A stretch of 64,000 bases of DNA, taken from positions 1-64,000 of the forward strand of contig CM074806.1 in NCBI GenBank assembly GCA_037447605.1. Direction: 5' to 3'. The DNA is from Zygnema circumcarinatum SAG 698-1b. Taxonomy: Eukaryota > Plantae > Zygnematophyceae. The notes beneath the pieces are model-generated. The model was not told where the DNA came from. It saw only the letters and a program-made list of their open reading frames with translations, and did not search any database. Both the position numbers and the translations under genes were made by a program. Shown in pieces: positions 34,154-58,203 of this stretch (position 1 is its first letter; each line of letters begins with the position of its first letter).

Positions 34154-35209
34154 CACAGACCCTCCGACAGACGCGCTCCACGTGGCGGCGCGGGGGCGCT
34201 CGGCCGCCCGCCCGCCCGCGGCGCCGCGCAGCGACGGCCGCCTGCGCGCGCGAGCCCGCCGCCGCCGCCCCGGCGCGCGGCCCGTTCGCCACTCCGCGCG
34301 CGCCACGTCGTGCTCCGCGCGGGGGGGCGGACCGCTCGCCCGGACCACCTCGACGGCCCCCGTCCGCCCCCGCGCGCGGTATCGCTTCCGCCCCGCGCCG
34401 CCCCGCCTCGCCGCAAGCGCCAATACGGAGGCGGTACTCCGCGGGGGCGCGCGCGGGGCGGGGCGCCACCTCAGCGGCCAGGTCGGCTCCGCGCTGTCGG
34501 CCCGGAGATCGCACGGGGGAGGAGGGCCGCTCGATGGCGCCACGTGGCGGAGCTCGCCCCCGTGGTAGGTGGCCCTCCCACAATGTGGGAGGGCGGGGGC
34601 GGCGCCGCCCGGGACCGGGTCGGGCCGAAAAGAACGGGGGGGTGGGGAGGGGGACGGTCACCGCTACGGGCAGCGCCGGGCGGGCGAGGGAGCGAGCGAG
34701 GGAGGGAGGGAGGCAGGCAGGCAGGCAGGCAGGGGCTGCCTTACGGCCGGGGCGGGCCTAGGGCGGGGGCCGGTGACGAAGTGGCACGCACGTGGGAGGA
34801 GGGGGCCTGACTGGCGGGAACGGCCGGCTCGCGGGGACTGTGTAGGCGGAGGCCCGCTCCTCCGCGGCTCTCTCCGCTCACCTGTAAAGCTCTCGCGTCC
34901 CCAGACGCCTGTTCATGACTAAACCCTAACCTAAAGTAGAAAGGATACTGCTGCCCCCCGAAGCTGCTTCACGGGATTGGAGGAAGCAATGGGGTTGGCC
35001 GCTGCCCAGCTGGGAGCTCCAACGAGCTTCCGTGAGAGGCACATAGCGGAAGTCTCCGCGTATTTTCTTGGTGTTGCACCTGCTGTAGCAGTAGGGTAGT
35101 GGAAGCTAGCGGGGGTTTATTTTCTTGCTGCGGTTTGGGAAGAGCATCCCGGGGAAGTAGCGCAGGCAGCTCTAGGGCAACACATGCCGTCTCCACGGGC
35201 CAGGCGGCC

Positions 35210-37069
35210 ATGTCCGCGCAGCCCACTGTGTCACACTCCCACTCTGAAAGCCCTCCCACGTCACAGCAATCTCCTCTCCTGACCCTTTCTCACGCGCAAG
35301 CTCCTCTTTCTGAGAGCTCGGGTCCTGCATACAGCTTTCTGCCCGAGCAGGAGCAGGTAGGACACGTGGCAGCTGGAGAGACACCATCGCAGAGCAGGGT
35401 GCAGAGTCAGCAGTTGACACCACATAGCGAGGAGCAGCAGGCTACGTCGCAGAGGTCGCGCAAGCGGGAGCACCAGGCGGGGGTTGAGGGGGAAGGGGAG
35501 CTCGAGGCGCCTGCAGCAAAGCGGCAGCGCGGCGTGTCTACGGGCAGCAAGGACCGCCACAGCAAGGTACAGACACACTCGGGGCTCAGAGACCGGCGAG
35601 TGCGTCTCTCCGTTCCCGCTGCTCTCGCATTCTATGAAGTGCAGGACAGGCTGGGAGTGGAGCACCCCTCGGCCGCAGTAGAGTGGCTGCTGCACCACGC
35701 ATCCCACGCCATTGCAGATCTTCCTCCGCTGCCCCCTCGCCCGGGAGTGCCGCACTTCCCGCTGAGCCCCACAGGCCCGCGCCCAGCAGCCATGGGTCCG
35801 CCGCCCCCTCTGCCACTGCCAGCTCCTCCGAAACTCACCTCCTCAGCTCCCCTCTACCGACGTCCCGCTCAGGGAGGAGCCAGACCAGGAACATTTCCAA
35901 GTCCGGTGCACTACAGGTATGGAGCAGCTGTGGGAATGGGCTTCGGCATGGAAGCCGGGGCGAGCTACCCGGAAGAGATGACGGCGATTGGGGTCGGCAC
36001 AAGCCCGGGCGTGGGGGTCCACATGGCGGGCGTTGAGGCGCCATCTTACGTACTGCCGTTGGGCGGGGGAGATTCCTTCGATCCTCTTGGAAGCAGCTCC
36101 ACGCGGCAGGAGGCGAGGGCTAGGGCCCGGGAAAGGGCAAAGATGAGAACCACGGTCGGGAGAGAGAGCTTTCTTGATACCGACACCTATCCCTCTGAGC
36201 TTTTCCCATCTTTTCAGGGAAGTGTGCCCTATCGGCCTGCCATGCCGCATTTTCAAGCGCACAGCCACCCGCCTCCCAGGCGGCACATGTCGAGTTTGCA
36301 GCCCCAGCACATGCAGGCAGGCTACGTCATGCCTCCAAATGTGCTGCAGACGCACTCCACGCGGACCGGGGAAGAAGCAGGAGCGGTGGTCACGTCACCG
36401 CGGGGCCTCACATTGGAGCCCTCCTTGTACGGAGAAGCCCATTCCCCTCCCTCACCTCTTTCGCCGCTCTCCCCCGCTTTCTACTCCTCCAGCCTGGATA
36501 GTCTTGGCTACCAAGCGAGTCCGCAGATGCGGCCTTCACCTTCCGGGCCTCCCCATGGCTTTGAAGCACCCATGTCTGCTTTGGCCTATCCTCCTGCTCT
36601 GCCACCCCTCCCGCAACCTCCACGCACCTCCATTGCTGCAGGACTATCTGGTTATCCCCAAACGTTTTTCCCGCCTTTCCATCATCCCGGTCATCGAAGC
36701 GGAGCTCTTGGCCGGCCTCCTTCCGCGTCAGCGGCCTACCAGAGTTCCCCAGGAAGCGCAGCTTACGGGCGGGGGGAAGGAACCCACGGCCTGTACCCCC
36801 ATCTGCAGGCGTACGGAGGAGGAATCCCGTACCACCCGCCCCCCCCTCCCCAGGCGACGCAGTGGCACGAGCACGGGCACTACACGCCGGAGGAGATCAT
36901 GACGATGCTGCGCACGACCACGACCGCCACCGAGGCCGCATCCTCGCCCGGGTACGGCGGCCGCCACGTGTCCAGCCGAGCGCGCAGCGCGGGGGGGGAC
37001 GCCGCCGGCGCCGAGGAGGAGGCGGCGAAGCCGGACTCGTCTCGGCATCGCCGCTCCTCCTTTCGATAG
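35210..37069 (+). CDS. TCP: Class II (CIN-like) TCP transcription factor, intronless, with an R domain
   Basis: TCP domain [48 protein letters not shown], of the class [10 protein letters not shown] type. R-domain-like [16 protein letters not shown]. The single ORF is open from 35099, and the first in-frame ATG is at 35210. Confidence 0.95.
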
Positions 37070-51390: not shown

Positions 51391-51672
51391 TCAGTCAATG
51401 CCACATCCTGTGCCAAGTACTGTCCGTACTTTGCATATCCAGTCCGTACAGATCGTACCTTCAACGTAATCACGTCACGGGGCAAGAAAAAGGGGCATGC
51501 TCCCCCCTGCTCCGGAGGGAAGAGGAGAGGAGAGGAGAGGAGAGGAGAGAAGAGGGGAGGGGAGGAGAGGAGAAGAGAGAGGAGGGGAGAGGGGCAGCCG
51601 TCTCGCCCGTCGCCCGCCCGGCACGGCCCGGCCCGGCCCGGCCCTGCGCAGGCGGTGCGCTGGCGGAACGCG

Positions 51673-54600
51673 ATGTGGCGGCGGCGCTCCAGCCGAGCCA
51701 ACCTCCTCCGCGAGTCGGGCCAGCTGGAGAAGCCGGCGCTCTTTGCCCTCCACATGTGCACCGCCGTTCTTGTCACCGTCAAGGTCCGTCATTTCCTGCC
51801 TACACTGCAATTAGTTGGTCGCTAGGCTTGCTTCTCATTCGTACGGCGACGTCTGCTTGCAAGTGTGGCTGGAAGGCGTCAAAACAATGCACGGCACAGT
51901 TATTGAGAATGCAGCGTATAAAAATGTAAAGGAACAATTAAGTTTTCCTATTGATATATGCCCAAGAAGTATTCTCAACGTGTATTTTCACTTGCCATGT
52001 ATAGAAATGGGGATCAGATGACATGCTAATGTTCACACTGTCATGCATCTTCTTTTGCTGGTCGTAAAATCAACGCAAAGGGGGGTGGATTTGGGTCTGC
52101 ACTTGCTTTTGAAAGGCAATTCACGAATAACTTTGATACTAAACGGGAAATAAAGGTTTGGACACCACACGCCCAATACGCCAAGGCGGATTTTAGTGTC
52201 AAGTAGAATCTGCATCCTGCTGAAGCCAAGTGAAAAAAATCTGGAACATGTCAACTTTTCCTCACTTTGTGCGTGAACGTGTTTACGAAAGGAGCCAGTT
52301 TTTTTTGGCGGCATGGTGTCAGGCCTATTGCATCTTTCTTGGGTGTCTGCGATAACGGGATACGATATAAGTACTACCTTTTTCTTCACGGGGTAGCAAG
52401 AAAAAGTTGACATATTCCAGTTCCGAAGTAGACAAGCTTTTCGTTCAGCTGAATGCAGTGGCATGAATTTAAACGTTTCAGTAGGAAGAAAATGGCCAAA
52501 ATCCACCTGAGGAACTTGGTCTATGTGTGGCCTGCATTTTCATTTCCATTCTCAAAACTATTGGTGACGCCAACTTAAAAGTTAGGGGTTGACTACGCAT
52601 GCCGATTTGAAGTGGAGCTTATTGTCTATCCCTATCATAGCTCGTTCTCCGCATGTCAATATGTTTTTGATTTTCCAAAGTAGATAGTGCAAGATGGCGG
52701 TGTCTGATGTGGCTAAGCCATTCCTTGTTGTCTGAGCAGATTGCAGCTATGGTCAGTGAAGATACACCCTTTATTGTGGCATCGCGAGGGACATTCATGG
52801 ACATGTTTCTTGCAGGGGTCACTGTGAGTCTTGCCTGCTCCCTATTGATCATTCAATCCTTGTCATCCTGCAAGCTCTTCTTTGTCAGCTCTTGAGCCGT
52901 GGTAGTCAAGAGACTCAGATGATACCATACAGAACTTGTCTAGCCTGATATTGCAACCTCCTTACCCCTCTTGTCAGTTCTTTTTCGACCACGATCCTGC
53001 GTGTTCTTCTCTCAGAGTCATTTTTGCTTTTTTAGATAGTGGCTCGTAAACGTGCCGGAAAAAATCGCCCTTGGTAAGCTGCATGTAGGTGCAAATGCTG
53101 CTATTGGTTTCTGTGACTGCTGAAACAAAAAGTTTACAACATTTGCAGCGTTGGATGTCCTGCAGAGACAAGGCGACACCGGCTTCATCTATGAAATTGA
53201 CTCTTGCCTGGACTCCATCAACCGGTCAATCCACACGGTGGGCAGACTGATTCACTGCACAATATTTTTTGCGCTCCTCAGACTTAGGGTCATTGACTGT
53301 AATGGAGAACATATGTAACTCAAAAAAAATGGTTGGAAGAGTTGGACTCTACATTTCTTGCGGACATTGCTTACACTGGAGCACGGAGGTTCACGGTTGA
53401 GTAGGCTTCTCCATTTTGTTGCTTTTGACGTGGAAAATTTGTTTTGCTTGCAGTATTACAATCTGCCATCGGTGGGGCTGGACGTCTACGATGCCCTATC
53501 AACTCCAATCCAAATCCACCTTGTAAGCTGGCTTAGACTCAAGTCTACGTTGGCACAAACGCAATACAAAGGAGTTAGCTTAACTAAGAGCAAATGGTGC
53601 TGCATTCTGCTAAGGCTCTTTCATATAGGACTTTCACCTTTGCAGGTGCATCTAAAGGAGAATCCGCGCCAAGTACTGCCTCGGCGGAACAACAGGCTTG
53701 TACAGGATTTGGAGACGAACGAACGTAAGTTTGAGGCTGACTTACTTCGAATGGACAATATTGTTATTTTTGTCTAAATGATTTCTGCAGCAGTTTCAGT
53801 CCAACCGGGCATCAACTCTTTGATGGTCGATGCTGCTTGAGGGTGGTAACGGGAGAATGGACTTGTGTCTCAGGATATGCGAATGTGTCTGGAAAGGGCG
53901 ACGATTGGATGGCCTTGTTGGGGATCGATGCGAAATCCATGAGCAAGAAGCGAAGTTTTTTCAATTCTTTGGTAGGCTACCCACCTGACCCTCCATCTTT
54001 GCGTTTCTTCCGTTTCGAATCCAAATCTGTAAGCTGCAACCAACACTTGCTTTTTGATAGTCCTTAGGAGGCACGGTGGCGGTGCAGATTGCATGCTTCT
54101 CAAGCATTCCAGAGCCTGATTTGCAGTTTTTGCCCTGTGGGAGGCTGTCAGGTGCAGCTAGATCTGCTTTTTCAGCTGAGGACGCTCCATCGGGAGTTTG
54201 ACCATGTGCAACTTTTTGACTGGGATATATGGGTATAGCTTTCTTGCCGAGCGTCTCTTTGTTAGAGCTATTGAAAAATGAGTCATGGCATTTGCAAATT
54301 AATGGGACAAACAACATGATAGCAAGTCTGTATTTGAGGAAGAGTCTTCTGGACATGCCACACTCGGTAAACTAACATGTTTGATTAATAGTCACATCGT
54401 CAAATAAGAGGCAAGGGTACGCGCACAGCGATTGAAGGATGGTTAGAGGGAGAACCCGTATACTATTTAACAGGGAGCAAATTACTAGTATCAGTGGACG
54501 CATGCTTGACGGGAAAATGATTCTTATTTCTTTCTTAAATAGTCGGGGCTTGAACTCTTTACCTCTGTGTAATCAGTGACGCATGCTCGCGGACTGTACT

Positions 54601-57048
54601 CCAGGGAAAAGAGACAGGATGAAGAGCGTGGGCTTTGTGAAATGGCATGCAGATCCATTACAGCTTCATTGCGCGCGGAGGGCGCATAGAGTTAACTCTT
54701 ACGGTCAAGGGGTCGCATGTCCGTTTGGGTATCTACCTCTTGCCCTGAACCTTGCAGTCTTGCGTGGCGATTCTTTCACTGGGTATAAAGGCCAACAATT
54801 GTAGCTCGCCTTCCTTTTTTGTTGCAGAAATGAGCTCTCTCCCTGCCCCTCTGAACTAGAAGGTAGCCGTAATAGTGTTGGTGACGGCGGTCGTGACGGG
54901 CCGGCGTGCAGGCTGCCTCACGGTGTGATTGAGGCGATGGGGGGGGGCGGCCTGCGAGCAGACACGAGCCTCCACTGGGAGCTGGCACTGGACGCGCTCA
55001 TGGCGGCCATGGCCCTCTTCAGCCAGCTCACAGCGCACCGCTGGAAGCAGGGCCTGCTCTCTGCACCTGTGAGCGACCCCTTTGCTCCTACTGCAAAACG
55101 TTTTGAATGCCCTCTTGCTCCTCACATGGTTTGCTTGTGAGTAGAAGGGGGAGCATAGGTGACGAGGAGCAAAAATGGGGAGGTGCAGGGGGGTGGAAGC
55201 CGGTGGATACATCGCAATGTATGGATGTTGGTGACAGCCGGCGCCGATTTGTTGATCTTGACGAGCGCTTTCCTGGATTTCAGTTAGTAATTCCTCCTGT
55301 CCGTAGCATTTGACTCTTTATGGGCATTTGTGCATTGTCTGAACTGGAAGCTTTCAGGTTGTAGTGCAATTGTATTTTTCGTTCCTACACAATCTGCTCA
55401 CTTGTATTATGAGTGCAGGTTATTTCTGCAACTCCTCTGCCTGATGGGCTCTCACTCCGCCTAAGGGTGAGCGCAGGTGATTACTTACGCCTCACTGGGG
55501 AAATGCGATCTTATGACATTTATGTCACAGGTGCACCCACCCACCCACCCACTCCTGCAAGGTGCACTGCTTTAGGTCGAGGAATTCACGATGGTCGTGT
55601 ATCTCGTTCGTGTATTTGTTTACGGTCGCTTTTTTTCGAGCTAACTGTGGAAACGTGACTCTTTCTGCATAGTTTGAGCTCCTCGTGGAGCTTAGTCTTT
55701 CCATGCCCATCGGAGGAGTGTAGGCTTAAATCTCTCTCTATGAAGGCGTACGGAGTTGTCGGAGATTGCTGACCCCAGCGGGCCACCTGGGGACGATGCA
55801 GGCATGGCATGCATGCTCTCGTGGTCGAGCATCATCCAACACCTCCAGCCGGTGCAGCCCTACAATGTAAGCAAGGCGGTCACGGACAGCCAATGCCCGC
55901 CTGCCACTCTGGAGGTGATTCATTCTGAGGTTTCTTCACCAAAAGCTCCGCACTGGATGGCCCTGACCTTCTCTTTTGTACTGCCTTGCACTACAGATGC
56001 TCATTCTCGCCATGGCTCGAGGCGTGCCTGTTGTTGCAAGGTATCCGATCGCCATCATCATGAGGCCATACAATCAGCTTATCCGCTTTGCAATCTGACC
56101 GAAACTGATCATATTCCCAATGTTGACTGTGTCGGCATCGCTTAGGTTCTTGATCGGAAGCATCCCATTATTGATGGGATTTGCAGGACTGGGCATGGCT
56201 CTCTTCTCAGAACACACGGAGAAGGTGCTCGCTTCTTTCCTATTTTACTCCACATCAAGTTAATGCTACTTTGTCGTTGCAAGTTTCAGCTTATTAACTG
56301 GCCCGATATGGATCTCACTGAAATGTGGAGGGTTCCATTTTGATGCCCTAAGGTTCACGAATATTGATGTCCGGGAGGCTGCAGTTTTCCAGCCTGGAGA
56401 ACAGTGCGGTGACTCTGTTTTCTGTGCTCAACGGGGACGTGCTGCTGGAAACTTGGCGAGAGATACGGCCGGCAGGCTTTATGGGGGATGTGTTTCTGGT
56501 GTCGTTCGTGTGCATTTTCGTATACAGCGGCCTCAATGTCTTCATCTCAATCATTCAAGATGCCTACATGAGTGCGAAGGAGGTAAGAGAGGTTGCGAAC
56601 GGACACTTCTTTAATTGTAACGAGTGGAGACTGGGGGAAAGGAATTAAAGAATTGACCTCTCTGTGAATGCAGCAAACTTCAAGTGGCCCAGGTCGACAG
56701 AGTACGGGAAGCTCTGAGCGGATTCAAGACAGGGGTCCTGAGAGACAAGAGCCTCTCATGGCTGCCGACCGAGTGGACGATCGGCTAGAGGCCTTGGAAG
56801 TGCAGCTGCGGGAGATACTGAACCTGCAGCGGCAGGTCCTCCTCCTGTGCAGCCCTCGGCCAGCTCCTCCGCCGGACGCGGCGGAGTCTCAGACGCGTGA
56901 CAGCTCGCCAGCGGCTGCCCTGCCCAGTGAGAGGGTCGTGACCGTGGAGCAGCTGAGCTTCAGCTCGTGGACGAATGCAGCCGCGGTCGGACATGAGCCT
57001 CGGCGGAACTCCGTGAAGGGGCGAGGCAAACAGCATTTGACGGAATAG
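51673..57048 (+). CDS. Mucolipin/TRPML-like cation channel (polycystin-mucolipin superfamily), multi-exon
   Basis: Exons colinear with mucolipin-1 motifs. S1: KPALFALHMCTAVLVTVK/IAAMV..FMDMFL. Luminal: YYNLPSVGLDVY (cf YLALPDVSLGRY) and IHYSFIARGGRIELTL (cf ITFDNKAHSGRIPISL). S2: LDALMAAMALFSQL. S3: RNVWMLVTAGADLLIL (cf NGWYILLVTSDVLTI). S4: SYDIYVT/GMACMLSWSSIIQHLQPVQPYN. S4-S5: MLILAMARGVPVVAR/FLIGSIPLLMGFAGLGMALF. Pore and S6: FSSLENSAVTLFSVLNGDVLLETW..FLVSFVCIFVYSGLNVFISIIQDAY. Coiled-coil-like tail. Confidence 0.92.
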
Positions 57049-57384
57049 CGCGGTGCATGACTCGGGAGTTTCCGAGCTTTGCTTTCAGTTTCCAGCTTTG
57101 CATTATTATTGTTCGTCGAGAGCATCTCTTAGTCAACCAGAGTCAAGGGTTCAGCAGCGCCGGAGAAGGTGTCGGCCAGCCCGCAGCAGACAGACAGCAT
57201 GTGGTGGTGGCAAGAGACAGGAAGTGTGGTCGCAGGATAGAAACATTCCTGAGCTTGTGCGGCTCGGCCGGCCCCCTGCATTGTGAATATGATGACATGA
57301 AATGTACCATATATTGTAGTGCCTACGTACCTTCTCGTTCTCACCTTCTTCATCTGTCTGCTCCCGAGGGTCGATGGACCGCGC

Positions 57385-57655
57385 CTCTCTCTTTCTTTCC
57401 CCCTCTCCCTCTCCTTCCCCCTCTCCCTCTCCCTCTCCCTCTCCCTCTCCCTCTCCCTCTCCCTCTCCCTCTCCCTCTCCCTCTCCTTCTCCCTCTCCCT
57501 CTCCCTCTCCCTCTCCTCTCCCTCTCCCTCCCTCTCCTCTCCTCTCCCTCTCTCTCCTCTCCCTCTCCTCTCCCTCCCTCTCCCTCTCTCCCTCTCCCTC
57601 TCCCTCTCCCTCCCTCTCCTCTCCTCTCCCTCTCCCTCTCCCTCTTTCTTTTTTC
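57385..57655 (+). repeat. (CTCTCC)n / CT-rich tract
   Basis: Tandem ctccct/ctctcc units between the mucolipin and KASII genes. Confidence 0.9.
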
Positions 57656-58203
57656 TGTGGCCCTGTTGTGCCTCGTTCGCTCGCTCTGTGGCGGCCGCCG
57701 GACAGTGCGTGCGCGCGCCTGTCGAACCAAAGGGAAGGGCCGTGCGATATGGCGATACGGAGATATTCCGATAATACTGGGATTTCCAAATTCTGCGATA
57801 TTGACGCGTTGCAATATGTTGAGGCACACCGATATTATTGCGATACGTAGATTTGACGCGCCCTGCGGATGGCGTGCGACGGCTGCGCGCGTGCCACGTG
57901 GCGCGCGGGCGCGCCTCCGTCGACGGCCAATGGCGCGCGAGCGTCCCCCGAGACTGGCCCGAATGGCGCTGACGTGGCACTCATCTGCTGACGTGGTGCA
58001 CGCAGCTGGGCAGCCGCACGATCGGACATCGACGGTCCCTCGTCGCCGCCCTTGAGCTCCCCTGAGCTAGGCCCGCGGAGGCAGGGAGAGGGAGGGAGAG
58101 TGGGAGAGAGGGAGGGGGAGAGCGAAAGGGAGAGAGAGAGAAAAAGGGAGAGGAGAGAGAGGGCGGAGAGGGAAGGTCAGACGCGGTTGCTCAGCAGGCA
58201 GCC

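What the first reader, a model, noticed from the sequence alone, without database searches (positions are those of the whole stretch)
51673..57048. Complete mucolipin/TRPML-type TRP channel in a streptophyte-type genome
Seen in sequence: about 13 GT-AG exons give all six TM segments, the large S1-S2 luminal domain, the pore helix and S6, colinear with animal TRPML. Established: land plants lack TRP channels, whereas chlorophytes and some early streptophytes retain them. The neighbours (class II TCP, AIRP2, FHY1, KASII N-terminus) are land-plant-like. Inference: this is a host-encoded endolysosomal or vacuolar Ca2+/metal channel retained in a close algal relative of land plants, which would help time TRP loss. 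I cannot say whether this locus has been described.
Basis: partly seen in the sequence, partly recalled or inferred. Interest (0 to 1): 0.85.

Follow-up and report, generated by a model that had tools for sequence, protein, structure and literature searches.

The report
Mucolipin-type channel gene in streptophyte alga
This alga, a relative of land plants, has an intact, spliced and transcribed gene for an ion channel of the mucolipin (TRPML) kind, a family that published surveys report as missing from land plants; an unnamed counterpart from the alga Klebsormidium is already in public databases, so this is a useful data point rather than a surprise.

Summary
A + strand gene at 51673-57048 is real. 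Transcript contigs from four runs (three studies) show 15 GT..AG introns, so there are 16 exons, not about 13. The product is a 561-aa six-helix channel.

- **Sequence family:** the pore exon passes Pfam PKD_channel and hits PDB mucolipins best.
- **Closest named relative:** Klebsormidium nitens KFL_000560160, a "hypothetical protein" about 50% identical. Six of its eight introns share position and phase with window introns.
- **Subfamily profile against PDB:** mucolipin-2/3/1 match over the full length (E 1e-37 to 1e-30). Polycystins match only the transmembrane core (1e-15).
- **Structure:** an AlphaFold model of the Klebsormidium luminal domain finds only TRPML luminal domains (ranks 1-49).

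It is therefore a host-encoded mucolipin-type group-II TRP channel on a scaffold that also carries a TCP gene. It belongs to a distinct old clade with a Klebsormidium protein and diplonemid and unidentified-eukaryote sequences. A Pyramimonas fragment was assigned to it by profile score only.

The clade keeps the N-G-D filter but has Val where TRPML has a second Asp. It lacks a cysteine pair kept in the luminal domain of most other TRPML-like proteins, and it has a long C-terminal helix.

Localisation, ligand and selectivity are untested. I could not check absence from land plants or the alga's exact position myself. Verdict: new member of a known kind, moderate interest.

The parts
51595..51672 (+). 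5' UTR, minimum extent. It is preceded by a (GGAGAG)n-type purine repeat at about 51511-51594.
   Evidence: Transcript contigs begin at 51595 in all four runs, and the repeat was skipped by the reads tool. Sequence read.
51673..51783 (+). Exon 1 (aa 1-37): start codon, short basic N-terminus (R3 R4 R5 R8 R13) and the first half of S1.
   Evidence: Joint 51783|52740 in four runs; translation; aligns to the pre-S1/S1 region of mucolipin-2 in the profile alignment.
52740..52823 (+). Exon 2 (aa 38-65): end of S1 and start of the luminal domain. It holds the clade-typical D-T-P-F-I-V-A-S motif.
53166..54728 (+). Exons 3-8 (53166-53237, 53454-53522, 53646-53724, 53874-53971, 54152-54232, 54653-54728; aa 66-224): the S1-S2 luminal (extracytosolic) domain.
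   Evidence: Joints. It is 56% identical to the K. nitens domain. That domain's model matches only TRPML luminal domains at ranks 1-49. Profiles of the domain hit only mucolipins in PDB.
54962..55068 (+). Exon 9 (aa 224-259): S2. An alternative acceptor at 54912 adds 50 nt and shifts the frame.
   Evidence: The 54728|54912 joint appears in X1 and X2 contigs. The 54961/2 start appears in X3 record 19 and X4 record 23. Stop at codon 229 for the long form. A K. nitens intron shares the same column and phase.
55189..55282 (+). Exon 10 (aa 260-291): S3.
   Evidence: helix map taken from the ortholog's model.
55477..55530 (+). Exon 11 (aa 291-309): S3-S4 linker and start of S4.
   Evidence: Joints 55282|55477 and 55530|55802 in four runs. 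They replaced my wrong first guess of 55414-55476.
55802..56224 (+). Exons 12-14 (55802-55866, 55997-56040, 56146-56224; aa 309-371): S4, S4-S5 linker and S5.
56385..56582 (+). Exon 15 (aa 372-437): pore helices, selectivity filter and S6. The filter is N387-G388-D389 at 56430-56438, followed by V390.
   Evidence: Pfam PKD_channel 1.3e-5, 25.2 bits against a cut-off of 22.4. PDB mucolipin-2/3 at 1e-5, mucolipin-1 at 5e-3 and polycystin-2 at 6e-3. 80% identical to K. nitens. N, G and D are invariant in 40 relatives.
56674..57048 (+). Exon 16 (aa 438-561): cytosolic C-terminal tail with a heptad-like helix (about aa 470-496), then the TAG stop.
   Evidence: The ortholog's model has one long helix at the matching place, 481-519. 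The tail sequence itself is not conserved with K. nitens.
57049..57323 (+). 3' UTR, minimum extent.
   Evidence: Contigs of X2 and X3 run to 57323.

Best explanation
The locus is a functional nuclear gene of the alga itself. It has 16 exons and encodes a 561-aa subunit of a tetrameric six-transmembrane cation channel of the mucolipin (TRPML) branch of group-II TRP channels.

Each subunit has, in order:
- a short basic N-terminus;
- S1;
- a mucolipin-fold luminal cap domain of about 180 aa between S1 and S2;
- S2-S4;
- an S5 / two-pore-helix / S6 pore with an N-G-D filter, giving one ring of Asp (the next residue is Val);
- a cytosolic tail with a long helix.

By analogy with animal and Dictyostelium mucolipins, it most likely releases or takes up cations (Ca2+, perhaps other metals) across an acidic endomembrane such as a vacuole or lysosome-like compartment. 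The luminal cap would sense luminal ions or pH, and the basic pre-S1 stretch is a possible phosphoinositide site.

Shown here: the gene, its splicing, its transcription, its family and fold, and its vertical descent shared with Klebsormidium. Inferred only: tetramer formation, ions carried, membrane of residence and ligand.
For: - **Splicing and transcription:** GT..AG joints in contigs of four runs from three studies, giving an open 561-codon CDS.
- **Family by sequence:** the pore exon passes the Pfam PKD_channel cut-off and hits mucolipin-2/3 best in PDB. A profile of six clade members hits mucolipin-2 at 1.3e-37, mucolipin-3 at 3e-32 and mucolipin-1 at 1e-30 over profile positions 5-436. 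PKD2L1 and PKD2 reach only about 1e-15, over positions 223-472.
- **Family by fold:** the AF2 model of the K. nitens ortholog (pLDDT 81, pTM 0.70) gives Foldseek ranks 1-36 that are all TRPML1-3, with PKD2 from rank 37. The luminal-domain model (pLDDT 90) gives ranks 1-49 that are all TRPML luminal domains (E 4e-10 to 4.5e-6, TM 0.62-0.72). The first polycystin hit is at E 7.8e-3 and TM 0.43. Luminal-domain profiles hit only mucolipins in PDB. The ESM Atlas model of the ortholog aligns to a 'Mucolipin TRP cation channel 1' cluster at TM 0.65.
- **Host origin:** six of the eight K. nitens introns coincide in column and phase with window introns. The window protein and the K. nitens protein are sisters at 100/99 support. 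A TCP-domain gene lies on the same scaffold.
Against: - Pfam's MCLN_ECD model does not hit the clade even at E<=1.
- The second Asp of the TRPML N-G-D-D filter is Val.
- The cysteine pair kept in the luminal domain of about 77% of other TRPML-like proteins is absent.
- No animal TRPML or TRPP sequence could be placed in my tree, so orthology with animal TRPML is not shown.
- The fold evidence comes from the roughly 50%-identical K. nitens ortholog, not from the window protein itself.
- A frame-shifted splice form is present in two of the four runs.
- Nothing here bears on localisation, gating or ion selectivity.
Confidence: 0.8

Rival explanations
1. It is a polycystin-2 (TRPP)-type channel, for example a ciliary or plasma-membrane sensor, rather than a mucolipin-type one.
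For: Pfam names only PKD_channel and Ion_trans. UniRef labels the K. nitens ortholog by the polycystin channel domain. PKD2 structures also match the whole-chain model, with TM 0.61-0.65. The C-terminal long helix recalls the PKD2 coiled coil; that comparison is from my own knowledge.
Against: Polycystin_dom (PF20519) hits 0 of 40 relatives, while MCLN_ECD hits 8 of 40. The clade profile scores mucolipins 22 orders of magnitude better and over the full length. The luminal-domain model matches polycystins only at E 7.8e-3 and TM 0.43, against 49 TRPML hits. PKD_channel is the Pfam model that mucolipins themselves carry (cluster rows).
Confidence: 0.07
2. It is a member of a separate, ancient TRPML-like clade that is not orthologous to animal TRPML and may work differently, with another membrane, no PI(3,5)P2 gating, or another selectivity.
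For: The clade scores over 500 bits with its own profile against 208 bits or less for all other relatives, and it forms one branch at 100/98. The Val after N-G-D is not specific to the clade, since the 40-sequence TRPML-like consensus also reads N-G-D-V. The clade lacks the luminal cysteine pair and has a long C-terminal helix. Its members include hemistasiid diplonemids as well as green algae.
Against: This refines the best explanation more than it competes with it, because fold, domain order and the N-G-D filter are those of mucolipins. No functional data separate the two readings.
Confidence: 0.45
3. The locus is a decaying or non-productive gene, or foreign DNA from contamination or recent transfer.
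For: One splice form (acceptor 54912) carries a premature stop. This genome's own protein was not found in the protein collection.
Against: The in-frame form is assembled in X4 and is consistent with X3. The CDS is fully open, and the pore exon is 80% identical to K. nitens. Six intron positions are shared with K. nitens. The contigs are identical to the window, with no differing letters in four runs labelled as the same organism. A TCP gene lies on the same scaffold.
Confidence: 0.03

Closest known systems
Mammalian mucolipins TRPML1-3 (for example PDB 5WJ5, 7SQ7, 9EKW, 6AYE; luminal domains 5TJA, 6HRR)
   Same: Six-TM architecture. Mucolipin-fold S1-S2 luminal domain. Two pore helices. N-G-D in the filter. 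S6 sequence pattern. Full-length colinearity.
   Different: Only 18-21% identity in structural alignments of the ortholog's model. Val in place of the second filter Asp. No luminal cysteine pair. A much shorter N-terminus. A long C-terminal helix instead of the short TRPML tail. No dileucine motif of the [DE]xxxL[LIM] type in either tail; the only match is at residue 149 in the luminal domain. Pfam MCLN_ECD does not detect it.
Klebsormidium nitens KFL_000560160 (hypothetical protein, 561 aa; GCA_000708835.1 DF237005.1)
   Same: Same length. About 49-52% identity overall: 80% in the pore exon and 56-58% in the luminal domain and TM core. Six shared intron positions. Sister in the tree.
   Different: 9 exons against 16 in the window gene. 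An N-terminus 17 aa longer. The C-terminal tail is not alignable apart from the helix. No shared gene neighbours.
Protist proteins annotated as mucolipin (Anaeramoeba flamelloides 'mucolipin'; Plasmopara halstedii 'Mucolipidin and related proteins'; Hemistasia MCOLN3 by KEGG)
   Same: Same domain order and N-G-D filter. They align over the full length.
   Different: Apart from the Hemistasia protein, which is itself a clade member, they fall outside the window's clade. Most keep the luminal cysteine pair.
Polycystin-2 / PKD2L1 (TRPP)
   Same: Group-II TRP transmembrane core, a pore with G-D, and a large S1-S2 domain.
   Different: The luminal domain is not the polycystin/TOP domain. Similarity is limited to S2-S6 at about 1e-15.

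Membership tests
TRPML (mucolipin) branch of group-II TRP channels | Six-TM cation-channel core with a pore loop, matched by Pfam PKD_channel / Ion_trans | tested here: met
   Exon 15 alone scores PKD_channel 25.2 bits against a cut-off of 22.4. All 40 relatives carry it. The ortholog's model shows S1-S6 and two pore helices.
TRPML (mucolipin) branch of group-II TRP channels | S1-S2 luminal domain with the mucolipin extracytosolic fold | tested here: met
   Tested on the K. nitens ortholog, which is 56% identical in this domain. The model has pLDDT 90, and Foldseek ranks 1-49 are all TRPML luminal domains. Domain profiles hit only mucolipins in PDB, at 1e-14 for the broad set and 1.4e-4 for the clade alone.
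TRPML (mucolipin) branch of group-II TRP channels | Recognition by the curated Pfam model MCLN_ECD (PF21381) | tested here: not met
   No hit at E<=1 on three clade members or on single window exons. Only 8 of 40 wider relatives hit, the best at 1e-5.
TRPML (mucolipin) branch of group-II TRP channels | Closer to TRPML than to TRPP over the whole length | tested here: met
   Profile against PDB: mucolipins at 1e-37 to 1e-27 over the full length, polycystins at 1e-15 or weaker over S2-S6 only. Foldseek ranks 1-36 are TRPML.
TRPML (mucolipin) branch of group-II TRP channels | Selectivity filter N-G-D-D (two acidic rings; the motif is recalled from the TRPML literature and is seen in the PDB alignments) | tested here: not met
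   N387-G388-D389 are present and invariant in 40 relatives, but residue 390 is Val.
TRPML (mucolipin) branch of group-II TRP channels | Conserved cysteine pair in the luminal domain | tested here: not met
   Two columns hold Cys in 79% and 76% of 33 other TRPML-like proteins. The same columns hold Leu and Val in the clade. The window protein has a single Cys in the luminal domain.
TRPML (mucolipin) branch of group-II TRP channels | Clade membership in a rooted tree with animal TRPML and TRPP references | not tested
   No animal TRPML or TRPP sequence could be brought in by reference. My tree holds only protist and algal relatives and is midpoint-rooted.
TRPML (mucolipin) branch of group-II TRP channels | Endolysosomal residence and PI(3,5)P2 activation | not testable with these tools
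   Only a basic pre-S1 stretch is seen. No dileucine sorting motif occurs in the tails.
TRPP (polycystin-2) branch | Polycystin/TOP domain between S1 and S2 (Pfam PF20519) | tested here: not met
   0 of 40 relatives hit it, and there is no hit at E<=1 on clade members. The best polycystin match of the luminal-domain model is E 7.8e-3 at TM 0.43.

The most novel reading that the evidence does not exclude
The gene marks a previously undescribed, ancient clade of mucolipin-like channels. The clade has a single-Asp filter, a luminal cap without the cysteine pair, and a tail with a long helix. It would have survived in the plant lineage right up to the algal sister group of land plants, which would place the final loss of all TRP channels on the stem of land plants.
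Probability: 0.3. Interest if true: 0.55.

Novelty: new member of a known kind. Interest (0 to 1): 0.42.

Why it matters
Reviews and surveys agree that land plants have no TRP channels, although green algae do (PMC7312350, PMC12806904, PMC11085791). When the family was lost within streptophytes is not stated in any paper I could find.

This locus gives transcript-backed proof of an intact mucolipin-type gene in a second streptophyte alga besides Klebsormidium, with shared introns that show vertical descent. If the alga is a zygnematophyte, as earlier notes of this scan say, the loss is pushed to the land-plant stem.

The gene also offers a plant-lineage model for asking what a mucolipin does beside the plant-type vacuolar channel TPC1.

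Tried and rejected
1. **Sequence-only gene model.** It was wrong at two places: exon 8/9 (donor 54711, acceptor 54828) and exon 11 (55414-55476). Transcript joints replaced both.

2. **The search for homologous proteins, three searches.**
   - The exon-plus-homolog alignment A1 returned 3 proteins.
   - P0157 alone returned 4.
   - The P0157 pore region returned only P0157 itself.
   - Known relatives that were in the query alignment were not returned, so these blanks say little about distribution.

3. **This genome's own protein set.** An exact look-up of the window's TCP protein found nothing. The set seems to be outside the collection, so I cannot say whether this gene is already annotated for this species.

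4. **Land-plant absence.** I could not test it directly. Three things are consistent with absence but do not prove it:
   - the labelled best hits of the exhaustive pore-exon search are protists and metagenomes;
   - the nearest large Atlas clusters include none dominated by Streptophyta;
   - the papers cited above say the family is absent.

5. **Literature.** Searches joining TRP, polycystin or mucolipin with Klebsormidium, streptophyte or zygnematophyte found no description of such a gene.

6. **Second copy.** None was found in the window (tblastn).

7. **Synteny.** There is none with the K. nitens locus.

8. **Species identity.** Notes of earlier agents give only 'zygnematophyte', not a species.
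Full report
**1. What is there**

The region 51673-57048 on the + strand reads as a chain of short open segments bounded by GT and AG. I first spliced it by eye into 16 exons. I then laid public data on window 51400-57350.

Four runs from three studies, all labelled as the same organism, hold contigs identical to the window that skip the introns. Such contigs can only come from RNA.

- The joints confirm introns 1-7 and 9-15 as GT..AG.
- They corrected my model at two places. Exon 8 ends at 54728. Exon 11 is 55477-55530, not 55414-55476.
- For intron 8, the listed joint (X1 and X2) uses acceptor 54912. That shifts the frame and stops at codon 229.
- In X4, record 23 leaves exactly 157 nt between pieces 53874-53970 and 54961-55068. 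That is the length of exons 7 plus 8, so this transcript uses acceptor 54962, which keeps the frame. X3 record 19 starts at the same point.

The final model has 16 exons, 1686 nt and 561 codons, with the stop at 57046-57048. The 5' UTR reaches back at least to 51595 and the 3' UTR runs at least to 57323.

**2. What family it belongs to**

*The window protein itself*
- Exon 15 alone (66 aa: pore helices, filter, S6) passes Pfam's PKD_channel cut-off.
- In the PDB it hits mucolipin-2/3 at 1e-5, mucolipin-1 at 5e-3 and polycystin-2 at 6e-3.

*Relatives found*
- An exhaustive HMMER search of 1.84 billion cluster representatives with this exon gave 301 hits.
- The spliced model aligns over its whole length with a few of them.
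- A word-index search added the only named close relative: Klebsormidium nitens KFL_000560160, a 561-aa 'hypothetical protein'. It is 49-52% identical overall: 80% in the pore exon and 56-58% in the luminal domain and TM core.

*The clade*
- With their own profile, seven clade members score over 500 bits; the window protein scores 550. Every other full-length relative scores 208 bits or less.
- The members are the K. nitens protein, two hemistasiid diplonemid proteins (Hemistasia and Artemidia), an intron-less metagenome gene, an MMETSP transcript and a Logan/ENA protein.
- In an IQ-TREE (LG+C20) tree of 40 rows, the window protein and the K. nitens protein are sisters (100/99). The seven-member clade is one branch (100/98).
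- A Pyramimonas obovata fragment scores 206 bits over its 162 residues and appears to belong to the clade too, but I did not put it in the tree.

*Mucolipin or polycystin*
- Profile against PDB sequences: a six-member clade profile hits mucolipin-2 at 1.3e-37, mucolipin-3 at 3e-32 and mucolipin-1 at 1e-30. These matches run from pre-S1 through the luminal domain to S6. PKD2L1 and PKD2 reach about 1e-15, over S2-S6 only.
- Whole-chain fold: I modelled the K. nitens ortholog, because a spliced window protein cannot be passed by reference. The model has pLDDT 81 and pTM 0.70. Foldseek ranks 1-36 are all TRPML1-3 and PKD2 starts at rank 37.
- Luminal domain alone: the model has pLDDT 90. Ranks 1-49 are all TRPML luminal domains, including the isolated crystal structures (TM 0.63-0.70 on both sides). 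The first polycystin hit comes at E 7.8e-3 and TM 0.43.
- Luminal-domain profiles: they hit only mucolipins in PDB, at 1e-14 for 40 relatives and 1.4e-4 for the clade alone.
- Pfam across 40 relatives: MCLN_ECD hits 8 and Polycystin_dom hits none.
- ESM Atlas: its own model of the ortholog aligns to a 'Mucolipin TRP cation channel 1' cluster at TM 0.65.

*Where it differs from textbook TRPML*
- Pfam MCLN_ECD does not detect the clade.
- The filter reads N-G-D-V, not N-G-D-D. N, G and D are invariant across 40 relatives.
- Two columns that hold Cys in 76-79% of other TRPML-like proteins hold Leu and Val in the clade.
- The N-terminus is short.
- The tail carries a long helix, at 481-519 in the ortholog's model.
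- There is no dileucine motif in either tail.

**3. Is it the alga's own gene?**

I mapped the K. nitens protein onto its genomic locus and aligned the two proteins. Six of the eight K. nitens introns fall in the same alignment column and phase as window introns. The script's tenth, zero-length 'exon' is an artefact that split one intron in two.

A single-ORF gene with a TCP domain (E 2.3e-24), a streptophyte transcription-factor family, lies at 35099-37069 on the same scaffold. The transcript contigs show no differing letters. Contamination or recent transfer is therefore very unlikely.

**4. How it probably works**

This section is inference from the family. The fold implies four subunits forming a cation pore, with the four luminal domains capping its outer mouth and one ring of Asp389 in the filter. 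Mucolipins of animals and Dictyostelium work on acidic endomembranes (PMC7312350), so a vacuole or lysosome-like compartment is the most likely site. The basic pre-S1 residues could bind a phosphoinositide, and the tail helix could help assembly or regulation. None of this was tested here.

**5. What is known already**

Papers state that TRP channels are absent from land plants and present in chlorophytes (PMC7312350, PMC12806904, PMC11085791, PMC4844392). [quoted passage not shown] I found no paper that describes a TRP, mucolipin or polycystin gene in Klebsormidium or any zygnematophyte.

The K. nitens ortholog has been public since that genome's release, but it is unnamed. This genome's own protein set seems to be outside the collections I could search.

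Earlier notes of this scan call the genome a zygnematophyte and report other 'animal-type' channels in it: an IP3 receptor, pLGICs and Orai. I did not test these notes.

**6. Limits**

- I did not verify absence from land plants or the species identity.
- No animal TRPML or TRPP sequences could be placed in the tree.
- Fold evidence is from the ortholog, not the window protein.
- The in-frame intron-8 joint is inferred from contig arithmetic and intron conservation. It was not read from the listed joint table.

**7. Verdict**

This is a real, expressed mucolipin-type channel gene of a streptophyte alga: a new member of a known kind, belonging to a distinct old clade. Interest is moderate.

Noticed in passing
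window 54728-54962: Intron 8 has two acceptors. 54962 keeps the frame. 54912 adds 50 nt and gives a stop at codon 229. The frame-shifted form is the one assembled in runs X1 and X2, and the in-frame form is the one assembled in X3 and X4. This may be unproductive splicing used for regulation, or simply noise.
   Followed up: partly
window 51511-51594 and about 57395-57800: A purine-rich (GGAGAG)n-type repeat sits just upstream of or inside the 5' UTR. Its complement, a (CTCTCC)n-type repeat, follows the 3' UTR. The gene is therefore bracketed by low-complexity tracts in inverted orientation.
   Followed up: no
window 51470: Contigs of X1 and X3 carry 58-68 unmatched letters upstream of 51470, and the two differ from each other. 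They may be alternative upstream 5' exons or chimeric contigs. If the transcript starts upstream of 51497, an ATG there opens a 105-codon out-of-frame ORF that overlaps the main start.
   Followed up: no
window 35099-37069 (+): A single long ORF encodes a TCP-domain protein (Pfam TCP, E 2.3e-24, domain at ORF residues 149-209). The protein read from its first ATG (35210) is not on record in the assembly collection.
   Followed up: partly
proteins P0009, P0159 (relatives, not in the window): The window's channel clade includes two hemistasiid diplonemids (Artemidia motanka and Hemistasia), which are predatory protists. They sit on their own long branch. This could be ancient shared ancestry or an old transfer from algal prey.
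   Followed up: no
L001:3001-4752: A clade member of 583 aa, 44% identical to the window protein, is intron-less on a 22-kb metagenome contig next to a dynein heavy-chain gene. That suggests a compact-genome, flagellate eukaryote.
   Followed up: no
window 51784-52739 and other introns: Low-depth contigs (2-19, against 47-236 for the spliced contigs) cover several introns in all runs. This is consistent with unspliced precursor RNA or some DNA in the libraries.
   Followed up: no
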